A stretch of DNA of 64,000 bases, from NCBI RefSeq assembly GCF_000142905.1, contig NW_013657627.1, positions 233,565 through 297,564 on the forward strand, given 5' to 3'. The stretch comes from Thecamonas trahens ATCC 50062 (Eukaryota > Protista > Apusomonadida). Below, one piece after another: positions 16,388-62,116 of the stretch. Both the position numbers and the translations under genes were made by a program. The notes below the pieces were generated by a model. The model was not told the origin of the DNA, made no database searches, and saw only the letters and a list, made by a program, of their open reading frames with translations. Within the stretch, counting starts at the first letter, position 1. The number at the start of each line of letters is the position of its first letter.

Positions 16388-18292
16388 ATGCGTGTAGTCG
16401 GTATGTGTGTCCCCCGCCCGTCTTTGTCATCCCCCCCCCCCCCCCTCTGTTCCCCCCAAGTGCGACCTCCTCTGGCGCAGGTACTCACGCAGTGGAACAA
16501 TGGATGGTGGGCATGGGTGATCTGCGGCCGATGTACGACCTGTGGCTGGTGTGTTATCTGTGGCTGGTGTGCGACCTGTTGCTGGTGTGCGACCTGTGGC
16601 TGGTGCGCGGCTGATCCGTGTGCGACCTGTTGCTGGTGTGCGACCTGTGGCTGGTGCGCGGCTGATCCGTGTGCGACCTGTGGCTGATGTGCGGGTGATC
16701 CGTGTGCAACCTGTGGCTGGTGTGCGACCTGTGGCTGGTGCGCGACCTTTCGCTGGTGTGCGGATGATCCGTGTGCGACCTGTGGCTGATGTGTGGGTGA
16801 TCTGTGTGCGACCTGTGGCGGGTACGCAGTCACCACCGAGACCGGCGACATCGCCACCATCGAGGTGAGCGCCTCAGAGACCATCGAGTCGCTCAAGGCC
16901 CTCGCCGCTATCCAGCTTTCCATCCCACTGCTCGAGCTAACATGCATGTTCAACGGCCGTCCGTTGTCGGATTCCTCCACCCTCGCTGATGCCGGCATTG
17001 CTGACAACGATGTTGTTCTGATGCAGCGGTCGCCTGCGTCGTCGGCCACACCGGCTCCACCCGCTGCCGCTGGTCAGATGTTCTCTGCTGACCAGATGGC
17101 CAACATGCTGGCATCGTTTGGCGGCGGCGGCGCCCCACCGCCTGCTCCCGCTCCCGCCGCTCCCGCCGCCGTCGCGGGCCCGGGCGCCTCCCCGGCGACA
17201 AGCGACCCAGCCGCCGCCCGCCGCGATCAAATGGCTGCTGCCATGCGCTCATTCTTCCAGAACAACCCGTCAGCGCCGCCGCCGTCGAGCGGCTCGGCCA
17301 TGGCGCTCGGCGCCACCACAGCGCCTCCACCGCTCCCAGACGACGGCCAAGTCCGCATCCAGGTCGAGGGCCAGTACTACACTGCCACCGAGTTTATCGA
17401 GTATGTCAAGGCCTCGCCGGACTTTCTCATGCGTCTTTCGTCGTCCAACCCGCAGCTCGCCCAGCTTGTCCTCGAGAACCAAGTCGACGAGGTAGAGCGC
17501 TTTATCCGCTCCTCGCAGGCCGCCGCTAAGAAAATCCGCGACCTCGAGGCCCGCATTGCCGCCAATCCGTTTGATGTCGAGGCCCAGCGCGAGCTTGAAG
17601 AGCAGATCCGCCAGCGCAATGTCGAAAACAACCTTGCTCAGGCCATGGAGCACAATCCAGAGGCCTTTGGCTCCGTCTACCTCCTCCGCATCAACTGCGA
17701 GGTCAACGGCGTACCGGTCCAGGCACTTGTCGATTCGGGTGCCCAGTCGACCATCATGTCCGAGGCCTGCGCCGAGCGCTGCGGCATCATGCGGCTCATT
17801 GACACTCGGTTCGCAGGCACCGCTGTTGGCGTCGGCTCGGCGCCCATCGCCGGGCGCGTTCACGCCGCGCCCATTACCATTGCCGGCAAGCACCTTACCT
17901 CCTCGTTCACCGTCCTCAAGTCGGACGGCGTCGACTTCCTACTCGGCCTCGACAACCTCCGCCGCCACGAGTGCTGCATCGACCTCCGTGCCGACGTCCT
18001 CCGCATCGGCGACGCCGAAGTGCCCTTCCTTTCCGAGGCCGACATCCACGCTCTCCGCAAGGACGCGCCTAATCCGGCCATCGACTCGGGCCGCGCAGCC
18101 ATGGACACCACCACCACCACCACCACAACCTCGACCTCGTCCGCAACTGCCAGCGGGAGCGTCGAGATCTCTGACGATGCCATTGCAAGGGTCATGGCGC
18201 TCGGCTTTACTCGCGAGCAGGCCGTCGCGGCCTTGCAACAGACCGGCGGCGACGAGGCTTTTGCCGCTAATCTCCTCTTTGCTTCGCAGTAA
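16388..18292 (+). CDS. DDI1: DNA damage-inducible protein 1 (UBL-HDD-retroviral-like aspartic protease-UBA); exon 1 16388..16400, intron 16401..16829
   Basis: Splicing GTATGT...CGCAG gives MRVVVTTETGDIATIEVS (UBL). Also NPFDVEAQRELEEQIRQRNVENN, AMEHNPEAFGSVYLL, catalytic ALVDSGAQSTIMS, FLLGLDNLRRHECCIDL, and UBA MALGFTREQAVAALQQTGGDEAFAANLL. Confidence 0.96.
16510..16820. repeat. Intronic compound minisatellite (18-bp GTGCGACCTGTGGCTGGT interleaved with about 15-bp GTGCGCGGCTGATCC)
   Basis: Visible tandem units inside the DDI1 intron. Confidence 0.9.
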
Positions 18293-18305
18293 GCGGGCCG
18301 ACCGG

Positions 18306-19900
18306 CTACACACCGGAACCACCGTCCGCCGCCATGTCAGCATTCTCATCCTCGTCCGAGTAGTACGAGTACGAGTAAAAGTCAAACGACGGGCTGCCGA
18401 CTACCGCTACCCCGGCCGTGGTCGCAATCCGCGCCGGTGTCGACGACGCCGCCGCCGCATCGTCGTCGACGTCCGAGTACGACCAGTATGAGTAGTACTC
18501 GTACTCGCTGTCATTGCCGCCCGACATCACCGCAGGGCGACCCGGAGGCAGCGGCAGCACGCTCTTCTCTGGCGAAGGCGAGAGGGTGATCGAGCCCGTT
18601 GTCGAGACGGAAAACACACCAGACGACGAGCTATCACTTCCATCGTCGTGGTCGTGGTTGACCAGCGCAGGATCCGATGCTGGCGCCGGAGCAGCCTTGG
18701 GCCGTGCTGGCAGCGGTGGCAGCGGCGCCGCCCGCTTGGGCAGTGGCGCCGCCCGCTTAGGCAGTGGCTCGGACTGCGGCGTGGTTGCAGTTGTGATCGG
18801 TGGCGTCTCTGACACGGGCGTCTGCACTGGCGCTGGCACTGGCGCTGGCACTGGCGCTGGCGCGAGCTCCGGCGCTGGCGCGGGTCTCGGGTCTGGCTTG
18901 GGTGCCGGGCGTTGTGGGAGTGGCTTGGGCGCTGGACGGTGCGGCAACGGCCTGGGTTGTACGGCCTTGGGCTGCGGAGCGGCTGCGACTGGCCGCGGCG
19001 GGAGCACCGGTCGCTCGGGCGACGCCGGCTCGGGCGATGCCGGCTCGGGCGATGCCGGCTCGGGTGGGGCGGCCGCGGGCGACGTCGGCTCGGGTGGGGC
19101 GGGCTCGGGCAACGGGAAGGTGGGTGGCGCCGGCTTGGGTGGTGCAGGAAGCGGCTTGTCCGGAATGCTGACATGAGCAGCAGTCTTGGCCGCGGGTGAA
19201 AGGCCGCGCTTGGAGCGCTTGCGGACCCGGACTCGTGTGCGGGTGCGAGTGCGCTTGGCCGCGACACTAAGCTCATGCGCCGAGTCGGGAACAGGGAAGA
19301 GGTCATCAAAGTGAACGATGAACAGTTCAACGGCCTTGTTGGCCTGGCCCATGGTAGCCACCGAGGCCAGCGGATCATCGGCATCGCCCAGTCCGCGCAG
19401 CAGGTTTGGCGCAAAGACAAGGGCCAGGTTTGCGGCGCCCATTGAGTTTGCGGCTTCGTGGCTGGCGACCTGGCGAAGAAAGGCGATGAGGGCGCGGAGG
19501 ATGACCATCCGTCTCGGCGACAGTCGCTCGAGTACAGAACCGAGTGCAGCAATGGGCTCATCCGCACGGACACTCGCCACCACATCATCATAGAGACGAG
19601 CAGGGATGAGCGGATCCGGTAGCTCTCTGAAGAACATCTTGAGGAGGGCAGCAGCGGTATGCTCATCAATGTTGGCAATGTCCGCGGTTCCATTCGAGGT
19701 ATCCAGCTCTGTCTTTGTGGCCTTGATGGCCGAAGCCGAAGCTGAGAGTCTGAACAGACCCTTTGTCTCCAGCGCCCCATCCCGACTCTGAAGTAGCGCA
19801 ATGAGCTTGCGTGGTACCCGAGGCAGCCACATCGGGTGCTCCTCCTCCTCCCACTTTGTGATCGACTCGCTTGTCATGCCCCGACCACTGCCACCAGGAC

Positions 19901-52187: not shown

Positions 52188-55100
52188 TTAAACACAGTCT
52201 GCAAGGACCTCGACCTCGCCTGCAAGCGCCGCCATCTCGTGGTAGTTGGCGATGTTGCCAAAGGCCTGCATGGCGACGGCGATGTCGTCGCGCGAGACGG
52301 CGAGCTTGAACTCGCCCGAGCACTCGCAGTACCGGCGGAGGTTGGAGAGCTTGACCTGGCGGCACTTGTTGCAGACCAGGTCCTGCAGCTGAAAGGCGGT
52401 GATCTTGGCGTGGAGCTCGTCGATGAGCCGTGCCTCGATGGCGGCCTTGTCGGCGGCGTGGCCGCAGATGGCGCAGCCCCAGTCGCCCTTGGTCACCCGC
52501 GGATCGCGGGCGAGGTCGACCGACCGCGACGCGTTGCAGTACGAGCAGATGACGTTCTGCAAGATGTACGTCAGGCATGGGTTGCGGAACTCGGCTGACG
52601 ACGCAAACTCGGGCACGCCGAGGATGCGGAGGAGCGATCGCTTGAGTTTGTCGACCTGGCTCTCGAGCGCCTTGTCGAGGTAGAAGACCTGCGTGACGTA
52701 CTTGACAAACTCGAGGCCTGGCGAGTCGAGCGGAAGGTGCGAGCCTGCCAGGCGCGGAAAGTCGGCCTTGTGGTACTGCCGCGACTCGGTGACAGCGGTG
52801 AAAAGCTGCTGCGCGTAGTGGTCGCCGATGAGCGCCCGCGCGTAGTCCTGCAGCGTCTCGGCGCCGTAGAACGCGCCTGCCGCCGGCGCGCCAGCCTCGG
52901 GCCCGCCCACGGCCTCGAGCCGCTTAGTCGCCTTGAACTCGTACATCTTGTAGATGTACTCGGAGACGACAAAGACAAACTGCTCCTCAAGCGGCTTGGG
53001 CAGATAAAGCGACATGTCCCAGTTGGAGATGACCTGCTGGGCTTGTGAGGTGGCGCGGAGCGCAGCGCGGGTGATGGCCCGCGCCTCCTCGGGCGAGCGC
53101 GCCGCCTCGGCCTTGTCAAACTCGGCCGCCAGCTCATCGACCACGTGCGGCTTGACCCGGATGCCGCCGTAGTTGGCCGGGTCGACAAACATGAGCTCGG
53201 CCCAGTACGCCGAGATGTGGACGCCCAGAAAGTGGAAGAGCGGCGTCTCGCCCACAGCCTTGAGCACGTACGCAATGTACGCCTCGGCGTTCTCCAGCTG
53301 GGTCTTTGACGTGGCGAGAATGATTTTCTCAAACGAGCCGTACACAATGTGCGCGCCGAGCGAGCGGAGCTTGGCCAGAAGCTGGAGGAAGACCTTCTTC
53401 ATCATCATGTGGACCAGCGAGTGCAGTTGCGGATCGTAGAGCTTCGACTTGGGGTCCTGCAGCCAGCGGTAAAAGTGCATCTGGAGCGCGTCCGCGCTGG
53501 TGTTCCGCCCGTGGCCCACGTCCACCGACCACTGGTGGACAAGAGCCTTGATGATTTGCAGCGCCGGTGCGGCGGCGAGTTCGTCTGACCCACCGCCGGC
53601 CGCCTCGTTGAGCACCGCCGGCCCGGCCAGCCCGCCCTCGATGAGCGCTTCCATCGACGTCGCCGGGCCTGACGCCGTCGCGCCAGACTTGGCCAGCACC
53701 GGCCCGCCGCCCACGCTCGCCTCCAGCGAGCCCTCGAGAGCAGAGAGGTACGTCGACTGGAGGATGGTGTTGATGGCGAGCGAAGAGAGCTCCAGCTCCA
53801 CACACACCGTGTGGTACGCGCCGGCCGAGACAAACTCCGGGTTGACCACTGGCGCGGCGACAGCGGCAAAGTCGTCGGCCTCGGACCCGCCGAGATCTGG
53901 AAGCGCCGAGAGCGAGGTCCACGCCACAAAGTTGTTTTCGGCGAGGAGCCGTGCGACGGCAATGTCGGTGATGCCGAGCGCGTAGTCCTCTTCGAGGCTA
54001 CCAATCGGCACTCGCGCGTACCGGGCAAGCGGCAGCTGGTTGCCCCACCACTCGTGCATGACAAAGTACCGGGCGAGGCCGCGCTCCACTGCCGCGGCCT
54101 GCCACCCAAGCGGCTCGTACTGCGAGTCGGCGACGTTGGCCGGGACGGTGAGGACAGGCACGGCGGCGAGGGTCGGGATCTCGCGCTGGAGGGTGGCCTT
54201 GTCTGCCGGCGAGCAGATCGAGACCACGGCGTTGCCATCGTAGTAGCCGACGAGCTCGTTGACCTCGCGGTAGCCGCGCGCGAGCCGCTTGACCAGTGTG
54301 ACAGCAACTGTGTAGCGTGCAGCGGCAGCGTCGGCGGCAGCCTCGACCTCGGCCATTGACTGCCAGCCGCCAGCGGCAGCGACGGCCGGCGGCGGCGGCT
54401 CCGTGCCTGCCAGCAGGCGCGCCTTGAGGACGCTTGCGAGGACGGCGCGGACCTTGACGCCCGAGCGCGAGATGTCGCTGCCAGTGAGCCGGCGGACTGG
54501 ATCGGCCGCCGACGGATCGACGAGGACCAGGTCGAGCTTGGAGCCAAAGGCCGGAAAAACGACAAAGACGGCGCGGGCGCGTGTAGCGTTCCGCTCGAGC
54601 GCAGTCGCCGAGTGGTAGATCATGAGGTGGGCCGCCGAGCCGAGCGAGCTTGTGCCCTCGGCGCCCGGCAGGTACGGGGCGGCCGATGGGGCGAGCGGGC
54701 GCAGGTCAGCGAGGTCGTATACGTGCTCCGAGACAGCGTGGAAGCGGGCGGAGCGGGCGATCTCAAAAACGCAACCGAGCGAAGAGACAGCCCGAAAGTA
54801 GAGCGGAGTCTGGTTCTCGTACACGCCCTCGACGTCTGGGTGGGCAAAGAACGAGGCGAGCTCCTTTGCGTGTGACCGGTAGATGGTCTCGGCCATAGAG
54901 AACTGGTACAGGTGCATGGGCTTCTTGGAGCGTGGCAGAGCCTTGGTGACGAGCACGCCTGAGGGGTTGGCGTCGGCCACGCGCGAGTTGACGAAAAAGG
55001 TGCGGGCGACGCGGATGTGGAGCGAGCGGACGGCACCGCGGACAAGGGCCCAGACCCGAAAGACGCCTGGGCCGTGTGAGTGCGATGCGTCGTCGATGCA

Positions 55101-58100
55101 GAGGACCTCCCAGTGCGACGGGCCGCGGGCCTGCGGGCGCGGCGCAGCGCGCATGTTGGCGGCCGACCCGGCATCCGAGACCGTGTCCTGCGTCAGCTGG
55201 AGGCGCATGGGTAGCGCTGATGAGCGCTGCGACGACATGCGGCGGGCGCGCTTGCGGGCCTCGCGTGCCTTGCGCATGGCCGCCCACTTTGCGCGCTGAC
55301 CGGCGTACCACTCATCAAACTGCGACGGCTGGGCGAGGACCGAGGGGAGGGCGCCGCGCGCTCCCGGCTGGCGACCGTCGAGGGCGGCAGCGGCGGCGGT
55401 GCGCTTGCGCGAGAGCGTGGTGACCCGCGGCCGGCCGGCGAGTGCGGCCGAGGTCTCCGGGTCGTCGACAATGGCCTCCATGTCGACGAGGCCAGCAGCG
55501 GTTGACTTGAGCGGATCCTCGGGCGCGGCGATGGTGGCACCGGCGGCGATGGCGGTGGCAAACATGTTCTTGACCGAGGCCTGCTTGAGCGGGTCGCGGG
55601 CGTCGGCGATGCGCTTGGCGAGCCACGACGGGTGCGGCACGCGCGGGACCGGGTTATCGATACCCTGCAGGGCAGCTGGAATAGTGACAATTTTCTGGAT
55701 AGAGGCACCGAGGCGAGTGATGTAGTACTCCCAGTCGAGGAGGTCGCGGAGGTCAAAGTTGGTCATGCCCGGATCCTTGCACCAGGTTCGGACCCAGTGA
55801 GTCATGACATCGGGCTCAGCCGAGAAGATGGCAATGGGCAGGGCGCGCTCCGAGACCGGCGCGCCGATAGGCTTCTCGGAAATGATGTACTTGCAGCAGA
55901 GGCCGGCGTCCTTGACCATTTGGTCGCCGAGGAAAGCGGCGAGGCGGCGGGCGGTGGTGATCGAGGTCGAGCGCTGGTCGCCATAGTCAGCGAGCTTGCG
56001 CGACATGGAGCGCGACTCGCAAATGAGCGAGACAAGCTCGTGGTCGGGCATGTGAGCGCCCTTGGTGAAGAGGACGTTGAGCCACTTATTGGCAATGAGG
56101 CCGACGGCGGCGTAGCACTCTTCGCGGGTCTTGCCCTCGAGGAAGGCACCAAAGACCTGTGTCTGGAAGATCTTGACAATCTTGAGCTCACCGCGGCGCT
56201 TGAGCTCAAAACCCTTGAGCTCGCACATGACGCCGTCGTCGTCAAAGACGGCATACCGCTTCTTGAGCTTCTTGTCCTTCTCAGTCGAGGCCGGGAGAAT
56301 CATGGCCTTGTACGGGCCGTCGACCTCAAACTCGATCGAGTTCTCGGCGTGAGTGGCATAGATCTTCGAGTCTGCGTCGACAAGGTCCTGGTACTGCGGG
56401 TTGGTAAAGTTGTCCTTGACGCCCTTGTTGAGGACAGCGCACGGGTAGTTGACCGAGAGCTTGGCGCCAGTCGAGGTGGTAAACTCAAAGTCTTCCGGGA
56501 ACGACGACGGCAGGCAGCACCAAATGCCATCGGTGTCGAGCTCGAGCGGGATGCCGACGCGCTCAACGAGAACGCGGGCGCCCTTGATGATCTTGGCACC
56601 AGTGTCGGTCACGATGCCGGCCATCTCCATCGAGTACCAGCGAGCGCCGCGGCGCATGACATAGCCGTAGAACGAGTTGAGGATGCACTTGTGGGCGAGC
56701 TGGAGGGAGTCGTACAGAATGACCATTTTCTTGGTCTCCTGCAGGACGTCGAGGCCCTCGCCCGAGGACTCCTGCTTGGCGAGCTTCTTCTTCCACGTCT
56801 TGAGCAGGCCCTTGTAGGTGTAGCGGCGGTCGCGGAAGGCGCGAACGGTGTCGACGTAGAACGGGTTCTCGCGCTGGCACACGATGGCCTCGCGCTCCTC
56901 CTCCGTCTTGACCGAGCCCTTGTTGTAGACCTTGCGGCAGTACTCGGCAAGGCGGGCCTTTGTCAGCTCGGCCTGCTTGGAAGCCGGCAGGTCGTCAAAC
57001 CAGACTTTGGTCGGCCCGCCGGGCGCGTCGTCGTCGACGACGCGCTCCGAGGCGAGCTGGTTGCGGACGTACTCATAGTCGGAGCGGGTGTTGGGCAGGT
57101 ACGTCCCGCGCCAGGTCCACGGCATGCGGCGCTGGCAGTTGTTCCCGCGACGATTAAAGTCGCACTTGGCGCACTCAGCCTCGGACATGATGGCAGTGGG
57201 CTGGAGGCGGTTGGTGAGAATGATGTTCGGGTACATGGCCGAGACGTCGAGATGGTAGATGCACGGCAGCTCGTTCCGCTTGGGCGCGGCCTGGAGAGCC
57301 TCGAGTTTGGCGACGATGGCCGCGCGGACCTCCTCGTAGTTGGTGACCGAGTCGAGCGGGACGCCGTGCTCGACCTGGAGCGCAAACTCGAGGGTGGCGT
57401 CGACGTCGTCGATGAGCTCGGCAAAGGCCGAGCCGTCCAGGTCAAAGTCCTCGGGCAGGTCAGAGCGGAAGACGCCAGAGCGGAGGGCCTCGACGTGGCC
57501 GCCGATGTAGGTCTCGGCCTCGAGCAGGTGGGCCTTGTACATCTTGGAGAGGGCGGACTTTTGCTTGTCGGGAAAGACGACGTTGACCTTGTACGCCTCG
57601 ACCATGAGGAGCGACTCACAGAGCGTGCCCGAGCCCTTGCGGAGAACGTCGTCGGGGATGAGCGGGATAATCATGCAGAGCGAGTAGATGAACGGGTGGA
57701 CGTACTTGAGGTAGAGGTAGTAGGTAGCGACGGCGTCGGAGACCGAGTACGAGGCAAGTTCCTGCGGACGCTCGGCGGCAAACGGGGTCATGTCCTCGGG
57801 ATCGAGTTCGAGCGGGTCATAGCCGAGCTTCTTCTTGGTCACAGCCTTGAGGCCGTGCGAGCCGACAGGCAGGTACGAGTCGCGCTTGACCCAGTAAAAG
57901 GCGTCCATGTGTGTGGCGAAGCGGCAGCGATACTCGCCCGAGCCCTGGCGGGTGGCGACGCCGATCTCATCGTACATAGAGATGCCATGGGCTGTGGCGC
58001 GGGTGTCGATGTAAGGCCAGTCGAAAAAGTCGCCGTTGTAGGTGACGTACAGGGTGGGCTTGACACGCTGGATGTGCTCAAAGAACTTGACCAGCAGCGC

Positions 58101-59435
58101 CTTTTCGTCGGCCTCGTTAAAGACAACAAAGTGGCCCTCGTAGTCGGGCTTGGGGGTGTACTCAAAGTCATCAATGTCGGCGGCGACGATCTCGCGGTTA
58201 GTAATGAGAAAGCCCTGGCCGTCGAGCATGTATGAGATCATCATAATCTGGTCGCCGGCATGCGCATCGGGAAACTTGAGCGGCTGCTTGGCAGTCTCAA
58301 TGTCAAAGGCGAGGATGCGGGTGTCCGGCCGCTCGAGAAGCTCGGGCTCGGGGCGGAGCGAGGCGAGGCCGCCGGAGAACGAGACGGTGAACCAGTTGGC
58401 GCAGCGGATGTCGGCGTCGATAGAGCAGCGGACGTAGTACGGCACGTCGTACTCACGGATGTCGACGAGGAGCTCCTCGACGTCGGCAAGCGACTCGGAG
58501 GCGTTGATTGACTCGTCGGCGCCGGCGACGGTGCCAAAGGCCGAGTAGGCGGTATAGTTGGACGACGACGGGGCGTCAAAGTCGAGCGAGGCGCTGGCGC
58601 GGTCCTTGTTGCGGCGGACAATGGCCTGAATGGAGCGGCGGACGGCGAGGAGGTCGTCAATGTTGCGGAAGGTGAGCTTGAGGTAAACGCGGAGGAGGCC
58701 GGTGACGTGGTTGTCTAGGTCGAGATCGACCTTGGGCGTGGGAATGATCTGCGAGATGTTCTCAAACTTGCGCTTGAGGAAAGTTTCCACGCCGACAAGG
58801 GCATCCTCGTCGGCAACAGCCAGATAAAAGTACGGCTCGTAGGCGACCGAGGCCTTGAACGTGGCGCCATCGCCCTGCAGAAAGTAGTAGTCGATGGCAG
58901 CGAGCGTGTTCCCGGTCTCCTGCTCCTCGATGGTTGTCGGGTGCATGTTGAGGAGCCAACCGAGCCGGTCAGGTCCCTCGGAGACGCGCGAGTAGCCAAA
59001 CTTGATGTCGAGGGCCTCGATCTTGGCAGCGCGCTCGGCGCGGGCCTCGGCTTTGGCCTCGGGTGAGAGGTACTTGCTACCCGAATTGTTACCCGAGCCG
59101 AAGCGCGAGCGAGACGACTCGGACCGCGTGCTCCGCATGTAGCCCTCGGGCATAGCAGAAGCACCCGACGGACCGGATGCACCTGCGGCGGTAAAGTCCG
59201 AAAAGGCCGTCGTCGATGTCTCGTCCATGGAGGCCAGCGAGGACGAGTCGTCAAAGCGGGAGCGGAAGGAGGAGTGACCAGAGCGACCAGAGCGACCAGC
59301 ACCACCCTGACCGTTTGCCGCAGCACGAGCATCCCGCTCTGCTGCTGCTACCTCAAACTGCCTCCGGGAGCCTCGTCCCCGTCCGCGGCGTGAGCCATGA
59401 CCACGGCTGTTGCGCTTGCCGCTGCCAAAGGTCAT
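52188..59435 (-). CDS. POLE: DNA polymerase epsilon catalytic subunit (intronless, 2415 aa)
   Basis: GWLLNM; ExoI AFDIET, ExoII YNGDFFDWP, ExoIII YSVSDAVAT; Pol YHLDVSAMYPNII, QLAHKCILNSFYGY, LELDTDG; CysX and C-terminal CysA/CysB motifs. Confidence 0.99.
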   Translation of the reverse strand: MTFGSGKRNSRGHGSRRGRGRGSRRQFEVAAAERDARAAANGQGGAGRSGRSGHSSFRSRFDDSSSLASMDETSTTAFSDFTAAGASGPSGASAMPEGYMRSTRSESSRSRFGSGNNSGSKYLSPEAKAEARAERAAKIEALDIKFGYSRVSEGPDRLGWLLNMHPTTIEEQETGNTLAAIDYYFLQGDGATFKASVAYEPYFYLAVADEDALVGVETFLKRKFENISQIIPTPKVDLDLDNHVTGLLRVYLKLTFRNIDDLLAVRRSIQAIVRRNKDRASASLDFDAPSSSNYTAYSAFGTVAGADESINASESLADVEELLVDIREYDVPYYVRCSIDADIRCANWFTVSFSGGLASLRPEPELLERPDTRILAFDIETAKQPLKFPDAHAGDQIMMISYMLDGQGFLITNREIVAADIDDFEYTPKPDYEGHFVVFNEADEKALLVKFFEHIQRVKPTLYVTYNGDFFDWPYIDTRATAHGISMYDEIGVATRQGSGEYRCRFATHMDAFYWVKRDSYLPVGSHGLKAVTKKKLGYDPLELDPEDMTPFAAERPQELASYSVSDAVATYYLYLKYVHPFIYSLCMIIPLIPDDVLRKGSGTLCESLLMVEAYKVNVVFPDKQKSALSKMYKAHLLEAETYIGGHVEALRSGVFRSDLPEDFDLDGSAFAELIDDVDATLEFALQVEHGVPLDSVTNYEEVRAAIVAKLEALQAAPKRNELPCIYHLDVSAMYPNIILTNRLQPTAIMSEAECAKCDFNRRGNNCQRRMPWTWRGTYLPNTRSDYEYVRNQLASERVVDDDAPGGPTKVWFDDLPASKQAELTKARLAEYCRKVYNKGSVKTEEEREAIVCQRENPFYVDTVRAFRDRRYTYKGLLKTWKKKLAKQESSGEGLDVLQETKKMVILYDSLQLAHKCILNSFYGYVMRRGARWYSMEMAGIVTDTGAKIIKGARVLVERVGIPLELDTDGIWCCLPSSFPEDFEFTTSTGAKLSVNYPCAVLNKGVKDNFTNPQYQDLVDADSKIYATHAENSIEFEVDGPYKAMILPASTEKDKKLKKRYAVFDDDGVMCELKGFELKRRGELKIVKIFQTQVFGAFLEGKTREECYAAVGLIANKWLNVLFTKGAHMPDHELVSLICESRSMSRKLADYGDQRSTSITTARRLAAFLGDQMVKDAGLCCKYIISEKPIGAPVSERALPIAIFSAEPDVMTHWVRTWCKDPGMTNFDLRDLLDWEYYITRLGASIQKIVTIPAALQGIDNPVPRVPHPSWLAKRIADARDPLKQASVKNMFATAIAAGATIAAPEDPLKSTAAGLVDMEAIVDDPETSAALAGRPRVTTLSRKRTAAAAALDGRQPGARGALPSVLAQPSQFDEWYAGQRAKWAAMRKAREARKRARRMSSQRSSALPMRLQLTQDTVSDAGSAANMRAAPRPQARGPSHWEVLCIDDASHSHGPGVFRVWALVRGAVRSLHIRVARTFFVNSRVADANPSGVLVTKALPRSKKPMHLYQFSMAETIYRSHAKELASFFAHPDVEGVYENQTPLYFRAVSSLGCVFEIARSARFHAVSEHVYDLADLRPLAPSAAPYLPGAEGTSSLGSAAHLMIYHSATALERNATRARAVFVVFPAFGSKLDLVLVDPSAADPVRRLTGSDISRSGVKVRAVLASVLKARLLAGTEPPPPAVAAAGGWQSMAEVEAAADAAAARYTVAVTLVKRLARGYREVNELVGYYDGNAVVSICSPADKATLQREIPTLAAVPVLTVPANVADSQYEPLGWQAAAVERGLARYFVMHEWWGNQLPLARYARVPIGSLEEDYALGITDIAVARLLAENNFVAWTSLSALPDLGGSEADDFAAVAAPVVNPEFVSAGAYHTVCVELELSSLAINTILQSTYLSALEGSLEASVGGGPVLAKSGATASGPATSMEALIEGGLAGPAVLNEAAGGGSDELAAAPALQIIKALVHQWSVDVGHGRNTSADALQMHFYRWLQDPKSKLYDPQLHSLVHMMMKKVFLQLLAKLRSLGAHIVYGSFEKIILATSKTQLENAEAYIAYVLKAVGETPLFHFLGVHISAYWAELMFVDPANYGGIRVKPHVVDELAAEFDKAEAARSPEEARAITRAALRATSQAQQVISNWDMSLYLPKPLEEQFVFVVSEYIYKMYEFKATKRLEAVGGPEAGAPAAGAFYGAETLQDYARALIGDHYAQQLFTAVTESRQYHKADFPRLAGSHLPLDSPGLEFVKYVTQVFYLDKALESQVDKLKRSLLRILGVPEFASSAEFRNPCLTYILQNVICSYCNASRSVDLARDPRVTKGDWGCAICGHAADKAAIEARLIDELHAKITAFQLQDLVCNKCRQVKLSNLRRYCECSGEFKLAVSRDDIAVAMQAFGNIANYHEMAALAGEVEVLADCV

Positions 59436-59770
59436 GCTGTGTGTAGGATTCTACAGGGGGAGGGAGGGGGGGTGAGGGGGGGACGGGGAATGTGGGATGC
59501 GAGGGAAGCGAGGGCGAAGGAGGTGCGTACGTGTATATATATGTGTGTGTGTGTGCGGGTGGTGGTGGCGGTTGTGTGTGTGGTTGTGTGTGGAGTGGAG
59601 TGGTGAGGACGCGGAGTGTGTGTGTGGCTGGTGGTGGTGGGAGGGGGGGTGGGGCATTCGTTGGTTGGGTAGAAACACAAAGTTTGTGGAGGGGAGCGAG
59701 GGGATCGCGGTGGTTATGTGGGCGATTGGAGCGATAGGGGGGTTGGACAATTGAGCTGGTAAGCGGTGGG

Positions 59771-61744
59771 TTAGCGGGTGGGGACCCAGTCCTTGGGTGC
59801 GGTCATGTCGACACGCTCGCCGACAAAGCGCGGGTGGCGCGGGACGCCGCCGTCGGTGAGTTCGGTGAAGCGGTAGGTGATGATGGCGCCGATGGGAGGC
59901 GGCGCGGCGCGGACAGCGTCGGAGAGGCCCGATCCGACGGAGAATTCGGTGCCGTTGGCCATGCGACAGCGGAGTGAGCCGACAAGGCCCGGAACGCCGG
60001 CATGGCGGGCAGCTGAGCTCATGAGCTTGGTGTGGGCAACGACGATGGCCTCGGCGTCGTGGAACGACTTGAGCTTGCGCAGCGTTTGTGACCGGCCACG
60101 AACATAGCGCGAGCCAGCCTGGCGGAGCATGACGCCCTCGCCACCCATTGCCTCGATACGCTCCAGCTCGTCGGTGAGGTGCAGCGGCGAGGTGCAGGCG
60201 ATGTGGTCGACGATGCGGGCAAAGCGCGGCTGCGCAGCGGTGTACCAGGCCTGGACCTTGGCAAACCGTGTCTCGAACGGTGGATCGCGACCAGAGCCGA
60301 GGACAGGAGGCGCGTCAAAGACGCAATACGTGAGCGTCGCCCAGCGCGAGGCGTCAGAACTCCGCACCGCGCCGACAGCGGTCTGAAACGCGCCGTGGGC
60401 GAGAAAGAGCTCGCCGTCGAGAGGAAGATCCGGCCCGGGCAGGCCGGCAGTAAACTCGGGAGGGGCATTGAATTGATTGCCAAGCCGCGAGTAGAACGCC
60501 GAGCCGTCCCAGTATGCACGGACACCATCAAGCTTCTCGGAGAGCCACCAGCCAGTCGGATCGTCACCACGCTCGAGCTCCCATTTGCGCGGAAGGAGGA
60601 GGGCACATGCTGCGGCACAGGCTGGCTGCGAGGCCGGCGGCAGGGGACGGGCGGGGCCGGCGGCAACACCAGCAGCTGGCAGGGGCGGCGGAGGCGCTGC
60701 GCCCTCAGCGGCGCACAGTGCAGCCATAAACTCTGGCTCGAGCACAACAGCCACGCCCAAGTTCTGCGCCTTGGTCAACTTGGAGCCCGGCTTGTCGCCA
60801 GCAACCAGATAGTGTGTTCGTGACGAGACTGAGCCCATGGGAAGCGCACCGATGGCAACCAGGCGGGCCGAGATGGCCTTGCGGGTGCCGGCAGTGAGCG
60901 CGCCGGTCAGCACAATGTGCTTGCCGACGAGCGGAAGAAGAGCCGCGCCGCCCGATGGGTCGTCGTCGTTGGAGTGGGCGAAAGCAGCAGGCGCCGCAGT
61001 GTGGGCTTGCATGGCAGAAGTGAGCGAGATGGGCGAGGGAGTGGCGAGCGAGGACTCGACCACCGCGGGCGGCTTCGGCTTGCCGCAGGCATCGCGATAA
61101 GGGTGAGAGAACGCAGCAAAGTGGGCTGGGTTCTTACGGTAGCAGTCCACACCGTATTTGCACGCCGGCAGCGGTGCACTCGAGCTGGCGGCACCATCGT
61201 CGAGCTCATCTCCAGAGCTGTTCTCGGCGTCGTTGTCGAGCTCCTCCGACGCCGACTGTGAGTGGTCGGAAAAGTAGTTGAGAGAGGCATCCAGCGACGG
61301 GACAGATGCCGCGGCAGGCAAGTCTGAGCTCTGGGCGACGGCAGTGCCAGCCAGAGTCTTTGATCGCTTGGTCGGCGGAGCGTCAGCGAGGAGCGCGGGA
61401 GATCTCGGGCGGGAGGCCGGCGAGGCGGATGGAGCGACGACAACAAGCTTAAAGTCGAGACCCGAGACTGGTGGCGGAAGCAGCGAAATGAGGTCGCCGT
61501 CGTAGGCCAGGAGCGAGTTGTGGAAGAGCGAGGCTCCGCGGACTACGGCCGGCGATGCGCCATGGTGCTCGAGAGCAAGAGCGCCGGTGTCCGAGTCAAA
61601 GACGGCGACGAGGTGCTGGCGGGAGACACGTCGGTCGGAGACCATAGGAAGGGCGCGCTGGTTGCGGCCCAGAACAATGCGGTCGCCAGGTGGAAGCGGT
61701 ATCACCGCATTGGTGGATGTGTGAACAAGGCAAGCACTCGCCAT
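59771..61744 (-). CDS. FHA-PBZ-BRCT-fused minimal ATP-dependent DNA ligase
   Basis: FHA IVLGRN...SDRRVSRQH; PBZ CKYGVDCYRKNPAHFAAFSH; BRCT GKHIVLTGAL...GSVSSRTHYLVAGDKPGSKLTKAQNLGV; ligase SEKLDGVRAYWDG, LDGELF, YCVFDAP, GGEGVMLR, KLKSFHDAEA; OB domain FSVGSGLSD...PRHPRF. Start taken at MASACLVH. Confidence 0.93.
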   Translation of the reverse strand: MASACLVHTSTNAVIPLPPGDRIVLGRNQRALPMVSDRRVSRQHLVAVFDSDTGALALEHHGASPAVVRGASLFHNSLLAYDGDLISLLPPPVSGLDFKLVVVAPSASPASRPRSPALLADAPPTKRSKTLAGTAVAQSSDLPAAASVPSLDASLNYFSDHSQSASEELDNDAENSSGDELDDGAASSSAPLPACKYGVDCYRKNPAHFAAFSHPYRDACGKPKPPAVVESSLATPSPISLTSAMQAHTAAPAAFAHSNDDDPSGGAALLPLVGKHIVLTGALTAGTRKAISARLVAIGALPMGSVSSRTHYLVAGDKPGSKLTKAQNLGVAVVLEPEFMAALCAAEGAAPPPPLPAAGVAAGPARPLPPASQPACAAACALLLPRKWELERGDDPTGWWLSEKLDGVRAYWDGSAFYSRLGNQFNAPPEFTAGLPGPDLPLDGELFLAHGAFQTAVGAVRSSDASRWATLTYCVFDAPPVLGSGRDPPFETRFAKVQAWYTAAQPRFARIVDHIACTSPLHLTDELERIEAMGGEGVMLRQAGSRYVRGRSQTLRKLKSFHDAEAIVVAHTKLMSSAARHAGVPGLVGSLRCRMANGTEFSVGSGLSDAVRAAPPPIGAIITYRFTELTDGGVPRHPRFVGERVDMTAPKDWVPTR

Positions 61745-62116
61745 GGCCGGCGAGAGTGAGGAGGTAGGCAATGGAAGCCTTCCAGTGGAAGGAGCTGGCT
61801 GAGAGCGGGTCGGTGTTTCGGCGGTCACGTAGTACGCGTTCACGGGGACAAATGCAAATAGGCGTTGGCTCGCTGGGAGTGTTGACGCTTCCGCCAGTGC
61901 TGCCTGGCCGATGACGATAGCAGCGACGTTGATTACCACCATCCGTCCATATCAGTGGTCGTTGTGGCGCTCGACCCTTCCCTCGCGGTTGCCTGGCGCG
62001 GAACTCCGTCTTACCTGCCTTGTTCAACTTTCCATTTAGCACACACATGTAGTCTATGGAAGGCGCTCAGAAGCGTCAGAGGCCCCTGGGGGGTGAGCTG
62101 GAGCGTGGAGGGGAGA

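What the first reader, a model, noticed from the sequence alone, without database searches (positions are those of the whole stretch)
59771..61744. Chimeric repair ligase: APLF-like FHA + PBZ + LigA/RFC1-type BRCT fused to a minimal bacterial-type ATP-dependent ligase
Seen: one uninterrupted ORF carries an FHA with the GR...SR.H signature, an acidic patch, a complete PBZ finger, a BRCT, and a ligase of about 270 aa with KxDGxR and motifs III-VI. It has no Lig1/3/4-type DNA-binding domain. Known: FHA+PBZ is the APLF layout. PNKP/APTX/APLF FHA domains bind phosphorylated XRCC1/XRCC4, and PBZ binds poly(ADP-ribose). The GSVS..T.YLVAG...GSKL.KA..LGV BRCT is typical of NAD-dependent LigA and RFC1. 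SEKLDGVRAYWDG ligases are typical of small bacterial LigE-like enzymes; related zinc-finger-fused ligases exist in some fungi. Inference: a horizontally derived ligase was wired into PARP-dependent break repair as a single-chain sensor, scaffold-binder and ligase, possibly replacing or supplementing LIG3. I do not recognise this four-part architecture as characterised.
Basis: partly seen in the sequence, partly recalled or inferred. Interest (0 to 1): 0.9.

Follow-up and report, generated by a model that had tools for sequence, protein, structure and literature searches.

The report
FHA-PBZ-BRCT-tagged LigE-type repair ligase
This protist gene really encodes one protein that joins an APLF-like damage-signal-reading head (FHA plus a poly(ADP-ribose)-binding zinc finger) and a bacterial-type BRCT to a small bacterial-type DNA ligase. 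It belongs to an already described, eukaryote-wide "Lig E / Lig K" family, and only the FHA-bearing layout was not found in the papers searched.

Summary
One uninterrupted minus-strand ORF (59771-61744, 657 aa) carries five parts:
- an FHA of the PNKP/APTX/APLF class;
- one complete PBZ;
- a LigA/RFC1-type BRCT;
- a Lig E-type nucleotidyltransferase with motifs I, III, IV and V intact;
- an OB_2 domain with motif VI, and no Lig1/3/4 DNA-binding domain.

- **Not a one-off chimera.** The ligase sits in a eukaryote-wide clade of Lig E/"Lig K" ligases with N-terminal PBZ, BRCT and SWIM modules (choanoflagellates, oomycetes, Amoebozoa, Euglenozoa, chytrids, some animals).
- **FHA recurs.** FHA-bearing versions occur in Luapelamoeba, Euglena longa, Diplonema, Planoprotostelium and in an uncultured organism known only from public-run contigs.
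- **The BRCT probably came with the ligase.** Bacterial relatives are BRCT-SWIM-LigE-WGR in the same order.
- **LIG3 is not replaced.** The genome also has orthologues of LIG1, LIG3, LIG4, XRCC4, Ku, PNKP and PARP1.

PBZ-tagged Lig E is already characterised (bdelloid AvLigE, Nicolas 2023, which names the Thecamonas trahens Lig E as PBZ-bearing). I found no paper describing the FHA head on this ligase.

The most likely function is a nuclear accessory nick and break sealer, recruited by PAR and by a phosphorylated scaffold. The FHA partner was not identified.

Earlier scan notes flagged two sibling fusions in this genome on other DNA (PolX and a kinase), not this gene.

The parts
59771..61744 (-). 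Coding sequence, 657 aa plus stop, with no interruption.
   Evidence: ORF list and sequence. The start at 61744 is supported by homologues that begin at the FHA. No joints were seen in the laid contigs.
61430..61744 (-). FHA domain of the PNKP/APTX/APLF class (aa 1-105), with the putative phosphothreonine-binding residues R27, S41 and R42, and H44.
61364..61375 (-). Basic patch KRSK (aa 124-127) in a disordered linker. It is a possible nuclear localisation signal, and homologues have similar patches at the same place.
   Evidence: The nuclear-localisation role is inference only.
61178..61279 (-). Acidic, serine-rich stretch (aa 156-189) with 10 D/E and no K/R.
   Evidence: The model is disordered here.
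61100..61168 (-). PBZ zinc finger (aa 193-215), C-x5-C-x6-H-x5-H, with Y197, Y202 and R203.
   Evidence: Pfam 2e-11. It is 67% identical to an APLF PBZ. Motif found.
60719..60934 (-). BRCT domain of the LigA/RFC1 type (aa 271-342).
   Evidence: NCBIfam LigA model 7e-18. PDB hits are LigA then RFC1 only. It is 56% identical to the BRCT of the bacterial BRCT-SWIM-LigE-WGR protein P0007.
60602..60718 (-). Pro/Ala-rich disordered linker (aa 343-381). It takes the place of the SWIM-like zinc finger that most relatives carry.
   Evidence: Alignment A2; pLDDT about 30; composition.
60065..60601 (-). Lig E-type nucleotidyltransferase domain (aa 382-560) with motif I K404-LDGVR, motif III DGEL, motif IV EGVMLR and motif V LRKLK.
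59795..60064 (-). OB_2-type OB fold (aa 561-650) with motif VI (PRHPRF).
   Evidence: Pfam 4e-22. The fold fits 6gdr.
61745..61942 (-). In-frame open stretch upstream of the supported start (66 codons from an ATG at 61942). It is probably 5' untranslated sequence.
   Evidence: No homologue has an extension before the FHA. Not settled by RNA.

Best explanation
This is an intact gene of a GC-rich, intron-poor protist. Earlier scan notes name the organism Thecamonas trahens; I did not verify that here.

The gene encodes a nuclear accessory DNA-repair ligase of the eukaryotic Lig E / 'Lig K' family.

**Catalytic end.** The C-terminal 270 aa are a complete minimal ATP-dependent ligase. The enzyme would adenylate K404, transfer AMP to the 5' phosphate at a break, and seal it. 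Like bacterial Lig E, it needs no Lig1/3/4-type DNA-binding domain.

**Targeting modules.** Three modules on flexible linkers are proposed to bring the ligase to damage:
- The PBZ finger binds poly(ADP-ribose) made by the genome's PARPs at breaks.
- The PNKP/APTX/APLF-class FHA docks on a phosphothreonine motif of a repair scaffold. By analogy this would be an XRCC4- or XRCC1-like protein, but the partner is unidentified.
- The LigA/RFC1-type BRCT was probably inherited with the ligase from a bacterial BRCT-SWIM-LigE-WGR ancestor. It most likely helps to hold 5'-phosphorylated DNA ends.

The enzyme works beside LIG1, LIG3 and LIG4, not instead of them.

**Shown here:** the domain identities, the intact motifs, the recurrence of the architecture in other eukaryotes, and the bacterial relatives.

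**Inferred:** PAR binding, phosphopeptide binding, DNA-end binding by the BRCT, nuclear location and the repair role.
For: - **Domains and motifs:**
- **Same or near-same layout elsewhere:**
  - P0003 (contigs of public runs, 6 cluster members) is FHA-PBZ-BRCT-Lig.
  - Luapelamoeba hula is FHA-PBZ-PBZ-BRCT-SWIM-Lig.
  - Euglena longa and Diplonema japonicum are FHA-PBZ-PBZ-SWIM-Lig.
  - The last three come from transcriptome ORFs; Luapelamoeba and Euglena are marked 'complete'.
- **Eukaryote clade:** a split with SH-aLRT 94 separates this clade from the bacterial WGR types. Its named members are Salpingoeca, Phytophthora, Pythium, Mastigamoeba, Pelomyxa, Gigantopelta, Ptychodera and chytrids.
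- **Bacterial relatives:** BRCT-SWIM-LigE-WGR proteins sit on contigs with dense genes on both strands.
- **Repair context in this genome:** about 20 PARP catalytic-domain hits including a PARP1-like gene, plus XRCC4, Ku70/80, PNKP, LIG1, LIG3 and LIG4.
- **Sibling fusions in this genome:** zf-PARP+PBZ+PolX and FHA_2+PBZ+kinase.
- **Precedent:** PBZ-tagged AvLigE is nuclear, radiation-induced, and raises damage tolerance in human cells (PMC10665377).
- **RNA libraries:** near-identical short metatranscriptome contigs lie on the FHA, the ligase core and the 3' end. One (60581-60731) runs from the last residues of the BRCT across the linker into the ligase. No joints were seen.
Against: - No experiment exists on this protein or on any member of the N-terminal-module clade.
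- The FHA partner is unknown. No XRCC1 N-terminal domain was detected. No [S/D/E]-T-[D/E]-[D/E] motif is present in the XRCC4, LIG3, LIG4, LIG1, Ku, PNKP or PARP1 open frames; the only hit was one in PolX.
- The FHA has Ser where its relatives have the Asn of 'G-x-N-P', so its peptide binding may differ.
- There is one PBZ, not a tandem pair. Per PMC6264785, a single APLF PBZ binds PAR far more weakly than the tandem.
- The RNA evidence comes only from short contigs in environmental libraries that may contain DNA.
- The transcript start is not mapped.
Confidence: 0.72

Rival explanations
1. A ligase taken recently from bacteria was wired, in this lineage, into PARP-dependent repair by separately grafting FHA, PBZ and a LigA/RFC1 BRCT. 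It stands in for LIG3.
For: The ligase core and the BRCT are both of bacterial type. XRCC1_N was not detected.
Against: - A LIG3 orthologue is present.
- The ligase groups with many eukaryotic homologues, not directly with bacteria.
- BRCT-LigE is already fused in bacteria.
- The same FHA-PBZ-BRCT-Lig layout occurs in another organism (P0003), and with a SWIM module in Luapelamoeba.
Confidence: 0.06
2. The same enzyme, but the BRCT acts as a protein or PAR-binding scaffold module (as in XRCC1, LIG3 or LIG4) rather than as a DNA 5'-phosphate-end binder.
For: BRCT domains of several repair proteins bind phosphoproteins or PAR (PMC3759693). The protein has other protein-docking modules.
Against: Sequence hits in the PDB are restricted to LigA and RFC1 BRCTs. 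By established knowledge (not tested here), that class aids DNA binding or binds 5'-phosphorylated DNA. The module is inherited from bacteria, which lack those scaffold proteins.
Confidence: 0.15
3. An organellar (mitochondrial) ligase, like the kinetoplastid 'Lig K' enzymes that gave the family one of its names. It might use the upstream in-frame ATG at 61942.
For: The family name comes from mitochondrial ligases of kinetoplastids (PMC6264785). A 66-codon in-frame open extension lies upstream.
Against: - By analogy with APLF, PNKP and other characterised proteins, PBZ and the PNKP/APTX/APLF-class FHA serve nuclear damage signalling.
- Homologues start at the FHA with no presequence.
- A conserved basic patch in the linker looks like a nuclear signal.
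- A second, divergent ligase of this type in the genome (L002) is a freer candidate for an organellar role.
Confidence: 0.04
4. An artefact: two or more neighbouring genes, or an assembly chimera, read through as one ORF.
For: In GC-rich DNA, long open frames arise easily (many spurious ORFs). The public gene model P0001 starts later, at M34.
Against: - All five domains are in one frame, with homologues that are collinear over the full length.
- Independent contigs and transcriptome ORFs of other species carry the same order.
- A contig from an RNA library runs from the end of the BRCT into the ligase without a break.
Confidence: 0.03

Closest known systems
AvLigE / MvLigE: PBZ-tagged Lig E of bdelloid rotifers and Mortierella (Nicolas et al. 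2023, PMC10665377). Called 'Ligase K' in Hecox-Lea & Mark Welch 2018 (PMC6264785).
   Same: The same NT + OB_2 minimal ligase core of bacterial ancestry, fused to PBZ. It is proposed, and for AvLigE shown, to be a nuclear, damage-induced repair ligase. The 2023 paper names the Thecamonas trahens Lig E as PBZ-bearing.
   Different: In AvLigE and MvLigE the PBZ lies C-terminal to the ligase, in Pro/Ser/Thr repeats. Proteins with a C-terminal PBZ form a separate clade in my trees; I did not confirm that AvLigE itself sits in it. Neither paper mentions an FHA in the ligase context, and the 2023 paper mentions no BRCT.
Bacterial cytoplasmic NT-OB_2-WGR ligases of Planctomycetes and Myxococcota, including the BRCT-SWIM-LigE-WGR forms (cluster noted by Williamson & Leiros 2020, PMC7470946).
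   Same: About 50% identity over the ligase core. The BRCT is 56% identical and sits in the same order, N-terminal to the ligase.
   Different: The bacterial forms have a SWIM-like zinc finger and a C-terminal WGR domain, and lack FHA and PBZ. The window protein has lost the SWIM module and has no WGR.
Classical periplasmic Lig E (Psychromonas 4d05, Alteromonas 6gdr, Neisseria 8u6x).
   Same: The fold and all catalytic motifs. The model fits 6gdr at target TM 0.87 and rmsd 2.0 A. The NCBIfam Lig E-type model scores 256 bits.
   Different: These are stand-alone enzymes of about 260-280 aa, described in the literature as periplasmic with a signal peptide. Here the ligase is the C-terminal third of a multidomain eukaryotic protein.
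APLF (aprataxin- and PNK-like factor).
   Same: An N-terminal FHA of the same class at the same position, followed by a disordered linker and a PBZ with the ADP-ribose-contacting Tyr, Tyr and Arg.
   Different: APLF has tandem PBZs, a Ku-binding motif and a C-terminal acidic histone-binding tail, and no enzyme domain. Here there is one PBZ, no Trp-containing Ku-binding motif in the linker, and a ligase attached.
DNA ligase III (with XRCC1).
   Same: A ligase coupled to break and PAR signalling that also carries a BRCT. The analogy is functional.
   Different: LIG3 has zf-PARP, a DNA-binding domain and a C-terminal BRCT of another type. The genome has its own LIG3 orthologue elsewhere.

Membership tests
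Lig E / NT-OB_2 ATP-dependent DNA ligases (PF01068 + PF14743; NCBIfam PRK09125) | Nucleotidyltransferase domain with motif I KxDGxR and motifs III, IV and V. | tested here: met
   K404-LDGVR, DGEL, EGVMLR and LRKLK are present. These columns are invariant in A2. Pfam hit.
Lig E / NT-OB_2 ATP-dependent DNA ligases (PF01068 + PF14743; NCBIfam PRK09125) | OB_2-type OB domain with motif VI. | tested here: met
   PF14743 at 4e-22. PRHPRF is present.
Lig E / NT-OB_2 ATP-dependent DNA ligases (PF01068 + PF14743; NCBIfam PRK09125) | No Lig1/3/4-type DNA-binding domain (PF04675). | tested here: met
   There is no PF04675 hit in this protein, although the same model finds three other ligases in the genome.
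Lig E / NT-OB_2 ATP-dependent DNA ligases (PF01068 + PF14743; NCBIfam PRK09125) | Score over the curated family cut-off, and a fold like solved Lig E structures. | tested here: met
   256 bits against a cut-off of 200. PDB sequence hits are 8u6x, 4d05 and 6gdr at 1e-47 to 1e-37. Foldseek gives 6gdr a target TM of 0.87.
Lig E in the strict bacterial sense (periplasmic minimal ligase) | A stand-alone enzyme of about 260-280 aa with an N-terminal signal peptide. | tested here: not met
   The ligase starts at residue 382 of a 657-aa protein whose N-terminus is an FHA.
Eukaryotic N-terminal-module Lig E/Lig K clade (PBZ/BRCT/SWIM-LigE) | The ligase core groups with the eukaryotic homologues that carry N-terminal modules. 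| tested here: met
   FastTree clade support 94. IQ-TREE split SH-aLRT 94. Resolution inside the clade is poor.
Eukaryotic N-terminal-module Lig E/Lig K clade (PBZ/BRCT/SWIM-LigE) | A SWIM-like zinc finger directly before the ligase. | tested here: not met
   It is absent from the window protein, P0002 and P0003, where a Pro/Ala linker takes its place.
APLF | N-terminal FHA of the PNKP/APTX/APLF class with the Arg/Ser/Arg phosphothreonine pocket. | tested here: met
   Phosphopeptide binding itself is not testable here.
APLF | Tandem PBZ fingers. | tested here: not met
   Only one PBZ is present.
APLF | A Ku-binding motif (basic residues followed by P-x-W) between FHA and PBZ. | tested here: not met
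   There is no Trp in residues 106-192 (sequence printed).
APLF | A C-terminal acidic histone-chaperone tail and no catalytic domain. | tested here: not met
   The C-terminus is a ligase. The acidic stretch lies before the PBZ.
DNA ligase III | zf-PARP finger, DNA-binding domain (PF04675) and DNA_ligase_A_C-type OB. | tested here: not met
   None of these are in this protein. The true orthologue is at G000:C1 (L010).
NAD-dependent ligase LigA | NAD-type adenylation domain, HhH and zinc finger before the BRCT. | tested here: not met
   Only the BRCT portion (last 70 positions) of the LigA models matches.

The most novel reading that the evidence does not exclude
Lig E-family ligases with an APLF-type FHA+PBZ head form an old, pan-eukaryotic but unrecognised 'fourth' nuclear ligase route. 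In it one polypeptide reads PAR, docks on a CK2-type phosphorylated scaffold (XRCC4- or XRCC1-like, or a new partner) and seals the break. In organisms such as this one, where I found no stand-alone APLF, the FHA+PBZ head would be a mobile cassette that couples enzymes (ligase, kinase) directly to damage signalling. APLF would be the enzyme-less version of the same cassette.
Probability: 0.3. Interest if true: 0.65.

Novelty: new variant of a known kind. Interest (0 to 1): 0.45.

Why it matters
Eukaryotic Lig E is the only case so far where a horizontally acquired ligase has been shown to raise DNA-damage tolerance (AvLigE).

This gene shows that the family is wider and more modular than the published PBZ-only picture. 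In several eukaryotic supergroups the ligase carries the full APLF-type head (FHA plus PBZ) and a BRCT of bacterial LigA type.

The fusion works as a 'Rosetta stone'. It predicts that Lig E is recruited through the same phospho-scaffold and PAR signals as PNKP, APTX and APLF. That prediction can be tested with a phosphopeptide array and a PAR-binding assay.

It also gives a compact, DNA-binding-domain-free, self-targeting ligase that could be of practical interest.

It does not overturn any view of repair. The organism keeps LIG1, LIG3 and LIG4.

Tried and rejected
- **RNA evidence.** Only environmental metatranscriptome runs held the stretch, at a word share of 0.07-0.11. Laying four of them on 2,701 letters gave short contigs of at least 99% identity on the FHA, the linker, the ligase core and the 3' end. 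None spans the whole gene, and such libraries can hold DNA. Transcript continuity in this organism is therefore supported only weakly.
- **FHA partner.** I looked for an S/D/E-T-D/E-D/E motif in the open frames of XRCC4, LIG3, LIG4, LIG1, Ku70/80, PNKP and PARP1. None was found; PolX has one. XRCC1_N gave no hit in the genome, which does not prove absence. I did not run complex prediction, because there was no candidate partner and phosphorylation cannot be modelled.
- **N-terminal search.** A word-based search with residues 1-225 returned only PBZ-driven hits (APLFs and a snail PARP-PBZ protein), not the FHA relatives. These were recovered instead with local HMMs.
- **Local FHA calls.** The C-terminal calls are not confirmed by Pfam. 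P0256 has independent support of 31.5 bits. I treat P0156 and P0205 as unverified. Pfam also misses the N-terminal FHA calls on P0133 and P0187; P0133 scores 76 bits in the leave-out test, while P0187 has no independent support.
- **Closest relative.** P0002 looked like a bare BRCT-ligase. Its contigs show an in-frame PBZ upstream of the called start, so the gene call is truncated. Whether it has an FHA could not be seen.
- **Tree resolution.** Resolution inside the eukaryotic clade is poor (36 of 68 inner branches are open). I make no claim on the number or direction of transfers, on whether the FHA was gained once, or on a root.
- **Organism name.** It rests on earlier scan notes. The named-organism collections available here do not cover eukaryotes, so I could not check it.
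- **Literature.** No paper held PBZ, FHA, 'ATP-dependent DNA ligase' and 'fused' together. The library does not hold most subscription journals, so this is not proof of novelty.
Full report
**1. What is in the sequence**

The feature lies on the minus strand. One open frame runs from 61942 to 59771. All residue numbers below use this 657-aa numbering.

Homologues begin directly with the same N-terminal domain, so 61744 is the best-supported start. The public gene model P0001 starts at M34, which cuts into the FHA.

The gene lies 335 bases upstream of the start of an intronless 2415-aa DNA polymerase epsilon catalytic subunit on the same strand. The window is 60-70% G+C. This is a compact, GC-rich, intron-poor eukaryote. 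Earlier scan notes call it Thecamonas trahens; I could not verify the name.

**2. Domains**

- **Pfam** finds OB_2 (4e-22), PBZ (2e-11), BRCT (7e-7) and the ATP-ligase adenylation domain (2.6e-6). FHA_2 scores only E 0.034.
- **NCBIfam** places residues 382-646 in the Lig E-type model PRK09125, at 256 bits against a cut-off of 200. It places the BRCT in the last 70 positions of the LigA models, at 7e-18.
- **FHA.** This was the weak point, so I tested it four ways.
  1. All eight weak PDB sequence hits of the first 115 aa are FHA domains, and five are PNKP.
  2. BLAST against a bird APLF aligns residues 15-50 with APLF residues 15-48 (E 3e-5). It also aligns the PBZ with both APLF PBZs.
  3. 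An HMM built from the N-termini of three other ligase fusions, leaving the window out, scores the window at 29.4 bits and APLF at 35.5 bits.
  4. An AlphaFold model from an 11-sequence alignment is an all-beta domain. Block pLDDT is 80-91 over most of residues 1-105. Its best fold matches are the FHA domains of APTX, PNKP (bound to an XRCC4 phosphopeptide) and APLF (bound to XRCC4), with target TM 0.69-0.75.
  - G26, R27 and S41 are invariant across ligase fusions, APLFs and a kinase fusion; R42 is nearly so.
  - The window protein has Ser where relatives have the Asn of G-x-N-P.
- **PBZ.** It is complete, with C195, C201, H208 and H214, and with the Tyr, Tyr and Arg that contact ADP-ribose in APLF.
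- **BRCT.** In the PDB it hits only LigA BRCTs and then RFC1.
- **Ligase.** All motifs are present. They are invariant in the alignment with bacterial relatives. The model superposes on DNA-bound Alteromonas Lig E (6gdr) at rmsd 2.0 A. There is no Lig1/3/4 DNA-binding domain.

**3. Relatives and origin**

The closest full-length relatives are eukaryotic.

| Layout | Where found |
|---|---|
| FHA-PBZ-BRCT-Lig | P0003 (an uninterrupted ORF on a contig of a public run; 6 cluster members) |
| FHA-PBZ-PBZ-BRCT-SWIM-Lig | Luapelamoeba hula |
| FHA-PBZ-PBZ-SWIM-Lig | Euglena longa, Diplonema japonicum |
| FHA-SWIM-Lig (FHA from my local HMM only) | Planoprotostelium |
| PBZ / BRCT / SWIM combinations | Salpingoeca, Mastigamoeba, Pelomyxa, Phytophthora, Pythium, chytrids, a glomeromycete, a snail, a hemichordate |

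Several of these are transcriptome ORFs, so in relatives the fused layout exists on single mRNAs.

The nearest bacterial relatives are about 50% identical in the core. They are SWIM-LigE-WGR proteins of Planctomycetes and Myxococcota. A subset is BRCT-SWIM-LigE-WGR, with a BRCT 56% identical to the window's. One of these sits on a 56-kb contig with dense genes on both strands.

In trees of the ligase core, the window protein falls in a clade that consists of the N-terminal-module eukaryotic proteins. Support is 94 in both FastTree and IQ-TREE. This clade is separate from the bacterial WGR forms and from a second clade with C-terminal PBZ, the layout described for AvLigE. Resolution inside the clade is poor.

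The simplest reading has four steps:
1. A cytoplasmic bacterial BRCT-SWIM-LigE entered eukaryotes long ago.
2. PBZ and FHA were added in eukaryotes.
3. The modules were shuffled.
4. The window protein's small subgroup lost the SWIM finger.

**4. Genome context**

The genome encodes the following:
- LIG1.
- A LIG4 orthologue.
- A clear LIG3 orthologue, with human LIG3 at 8e-146.
- XRCC4, Ku70/80 and a PNKP phosphatase.
- About 20 PARP catalytic-domain hits, including a PARP1-like gene.

No XRCC1 N-terminal domain was found.

FHA_2 and PBZ together occur only in this ligase and in a kinase fusion. PBZ also occurs on a PolX enzyme that carries zf-PARP. I found no stand-alone APLF.

So the ligase supplements LIG3 rather than replacing it. 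Direct fusion of damage-signal readers to enzymes is a habit of this genome, as is known for Dictyostelium (PMC8529158).

**5. Literature**

- Hecox-Lea & Mark Welch 2018 describe this family as 'Ligase K', generally with PBZ domains N-terminal to the core. They draw the Salpingoeca rosetta protein, which my local HMM census calls PBZ-PBZ-BRCT-SWIM-Lig; Pfam did not report its BRCT (PMC6264785).
- Nicolas et al. 2023 characterise AvLigE and name the Thecamonas trahens Lig E as PBZ-bearing (PMC10665377).
- Williamson & Leiros 2020 note the link between bacterial NT-OB_2-WGR ligases and eukaryotic ones (PMC7470946).
- None mentions an FHA on these ligases, and no paper combined the terms.

**6. 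Mechanism**

Shown: the protein has a complete minimal ligase, an intact PBZ, an FHA with the phosphothreonine pocket residues, a LigA/RFC1-type BRCT, disordered linkers and a conserved basic patch.

Inferred: PARP activity at a break makes PAR, and the PBZ binds it. The FHA binds a phosphorylated scaffold. The BRCT helps to hold the 5'-phosphate end. The Lig E core seals the break.

The FHA partner is open.

**7. RNA**

Only short, near-identical contigs from marine and subsurface metatranscriptomes were found. They lie on the FHA, the linker, the ligase core and the 3' end. One runs from the end of the BRCT across the linker into the ligase. No joints were seen. This is weak support.

The stretch laid was 2,701 letters. 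No spliced model was needed.

**8. Verdict**

This is a real, intact gene and an FHA-bearing variant of a known family. Its 'unique chimera replacing LIG3' story is not. Interest is moderate.

Noticed in passing
L007:961-2793 (+) = G000:C8, about 269385-271217: A 611-aa open frame joins zf-PARP (4e-16), PBZ (3e-9) and a complete family-X polymerase (pol beta/lambda palm, thumb, fingers). This is a gap-filling polymerase carrying its own nick sensor and PAR reader. An earlier scan note (s1-746507) flags the same gene.
   Followed up: partly
L021:37-1740 (-) = G000:C82: A 568-aa open frame has FHA_2 (4e-7), a PBZ (5e-5) and a protein kinase domain. Its FHA and PBZ align with those of the ligase. 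The same APLF-like head therefore sits on two different enzymes in this genome. An earlier scan note (s1-742080) flags it.
   Followed up: partly
L002:238-1716 (+) = G000:C60, about 17973-19451: A second, very divergent ligase of the NT + OB_2 type (493 aa), with an unassigned 190-aa N-terminal part. It forms a very long branch in the tree. It is a candidate organellar 'Lig K'-like enzyme.
   Followed up: partly
L010:3777-7130 (+) = G000:C1: The LIG3 orthologue's open frame (1117 aa) has a 530-aa C-terminal extension with no Pfam hit and no zf-PARP within the frame. An upstream exon was not looked for.
   Followed up: no
L020:1315-2640 (+) = G000:C16; L022:1261-3165 (+) = G000:C9: Two further FHA_2-class proteins. 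One has a VWA_4 domain; the other has no other recognised domain in the part fetched. The PNKP phosphatase gene (G000:C5) gave no FHA_2 hit.
   Followed up: no
P0205 (861 aa; contig of a public run): A relative with BRCT - Lig E - WWE. WWE is another PAR-binding domain, so the family has recruited at least two kinds of PAR reader in eukaryotes (PBZ and WWE), besides the WGR domain of the bacterial forms.
   Followed up: no
L029:200-440, L030:79-231, L031 (marine metagenome contigs of P0002): The gene call of the closest relative starts too late. An intact PBZ lies in frame upstream of the called ATG, and in L029 the frame is open for 83 codons without an ATG. This suggests an intron or a missing exon.
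   Followed up: partly
window 52188-59435 (-) and 59436-59770: An intronless 2415-aa DNA polymerase epsilon catalytic subunit lies directly downstream on the same strand. The 335-base spacer is rich in CA/TA simple repeats, which also attracted unrelated reads.
   Followed up: no
window from 62434 to beyond 62500: A run of N (an assembly gap) lies about 700 bases upstream of the gene's start. The window ends at the contig end.
   Followed up: no
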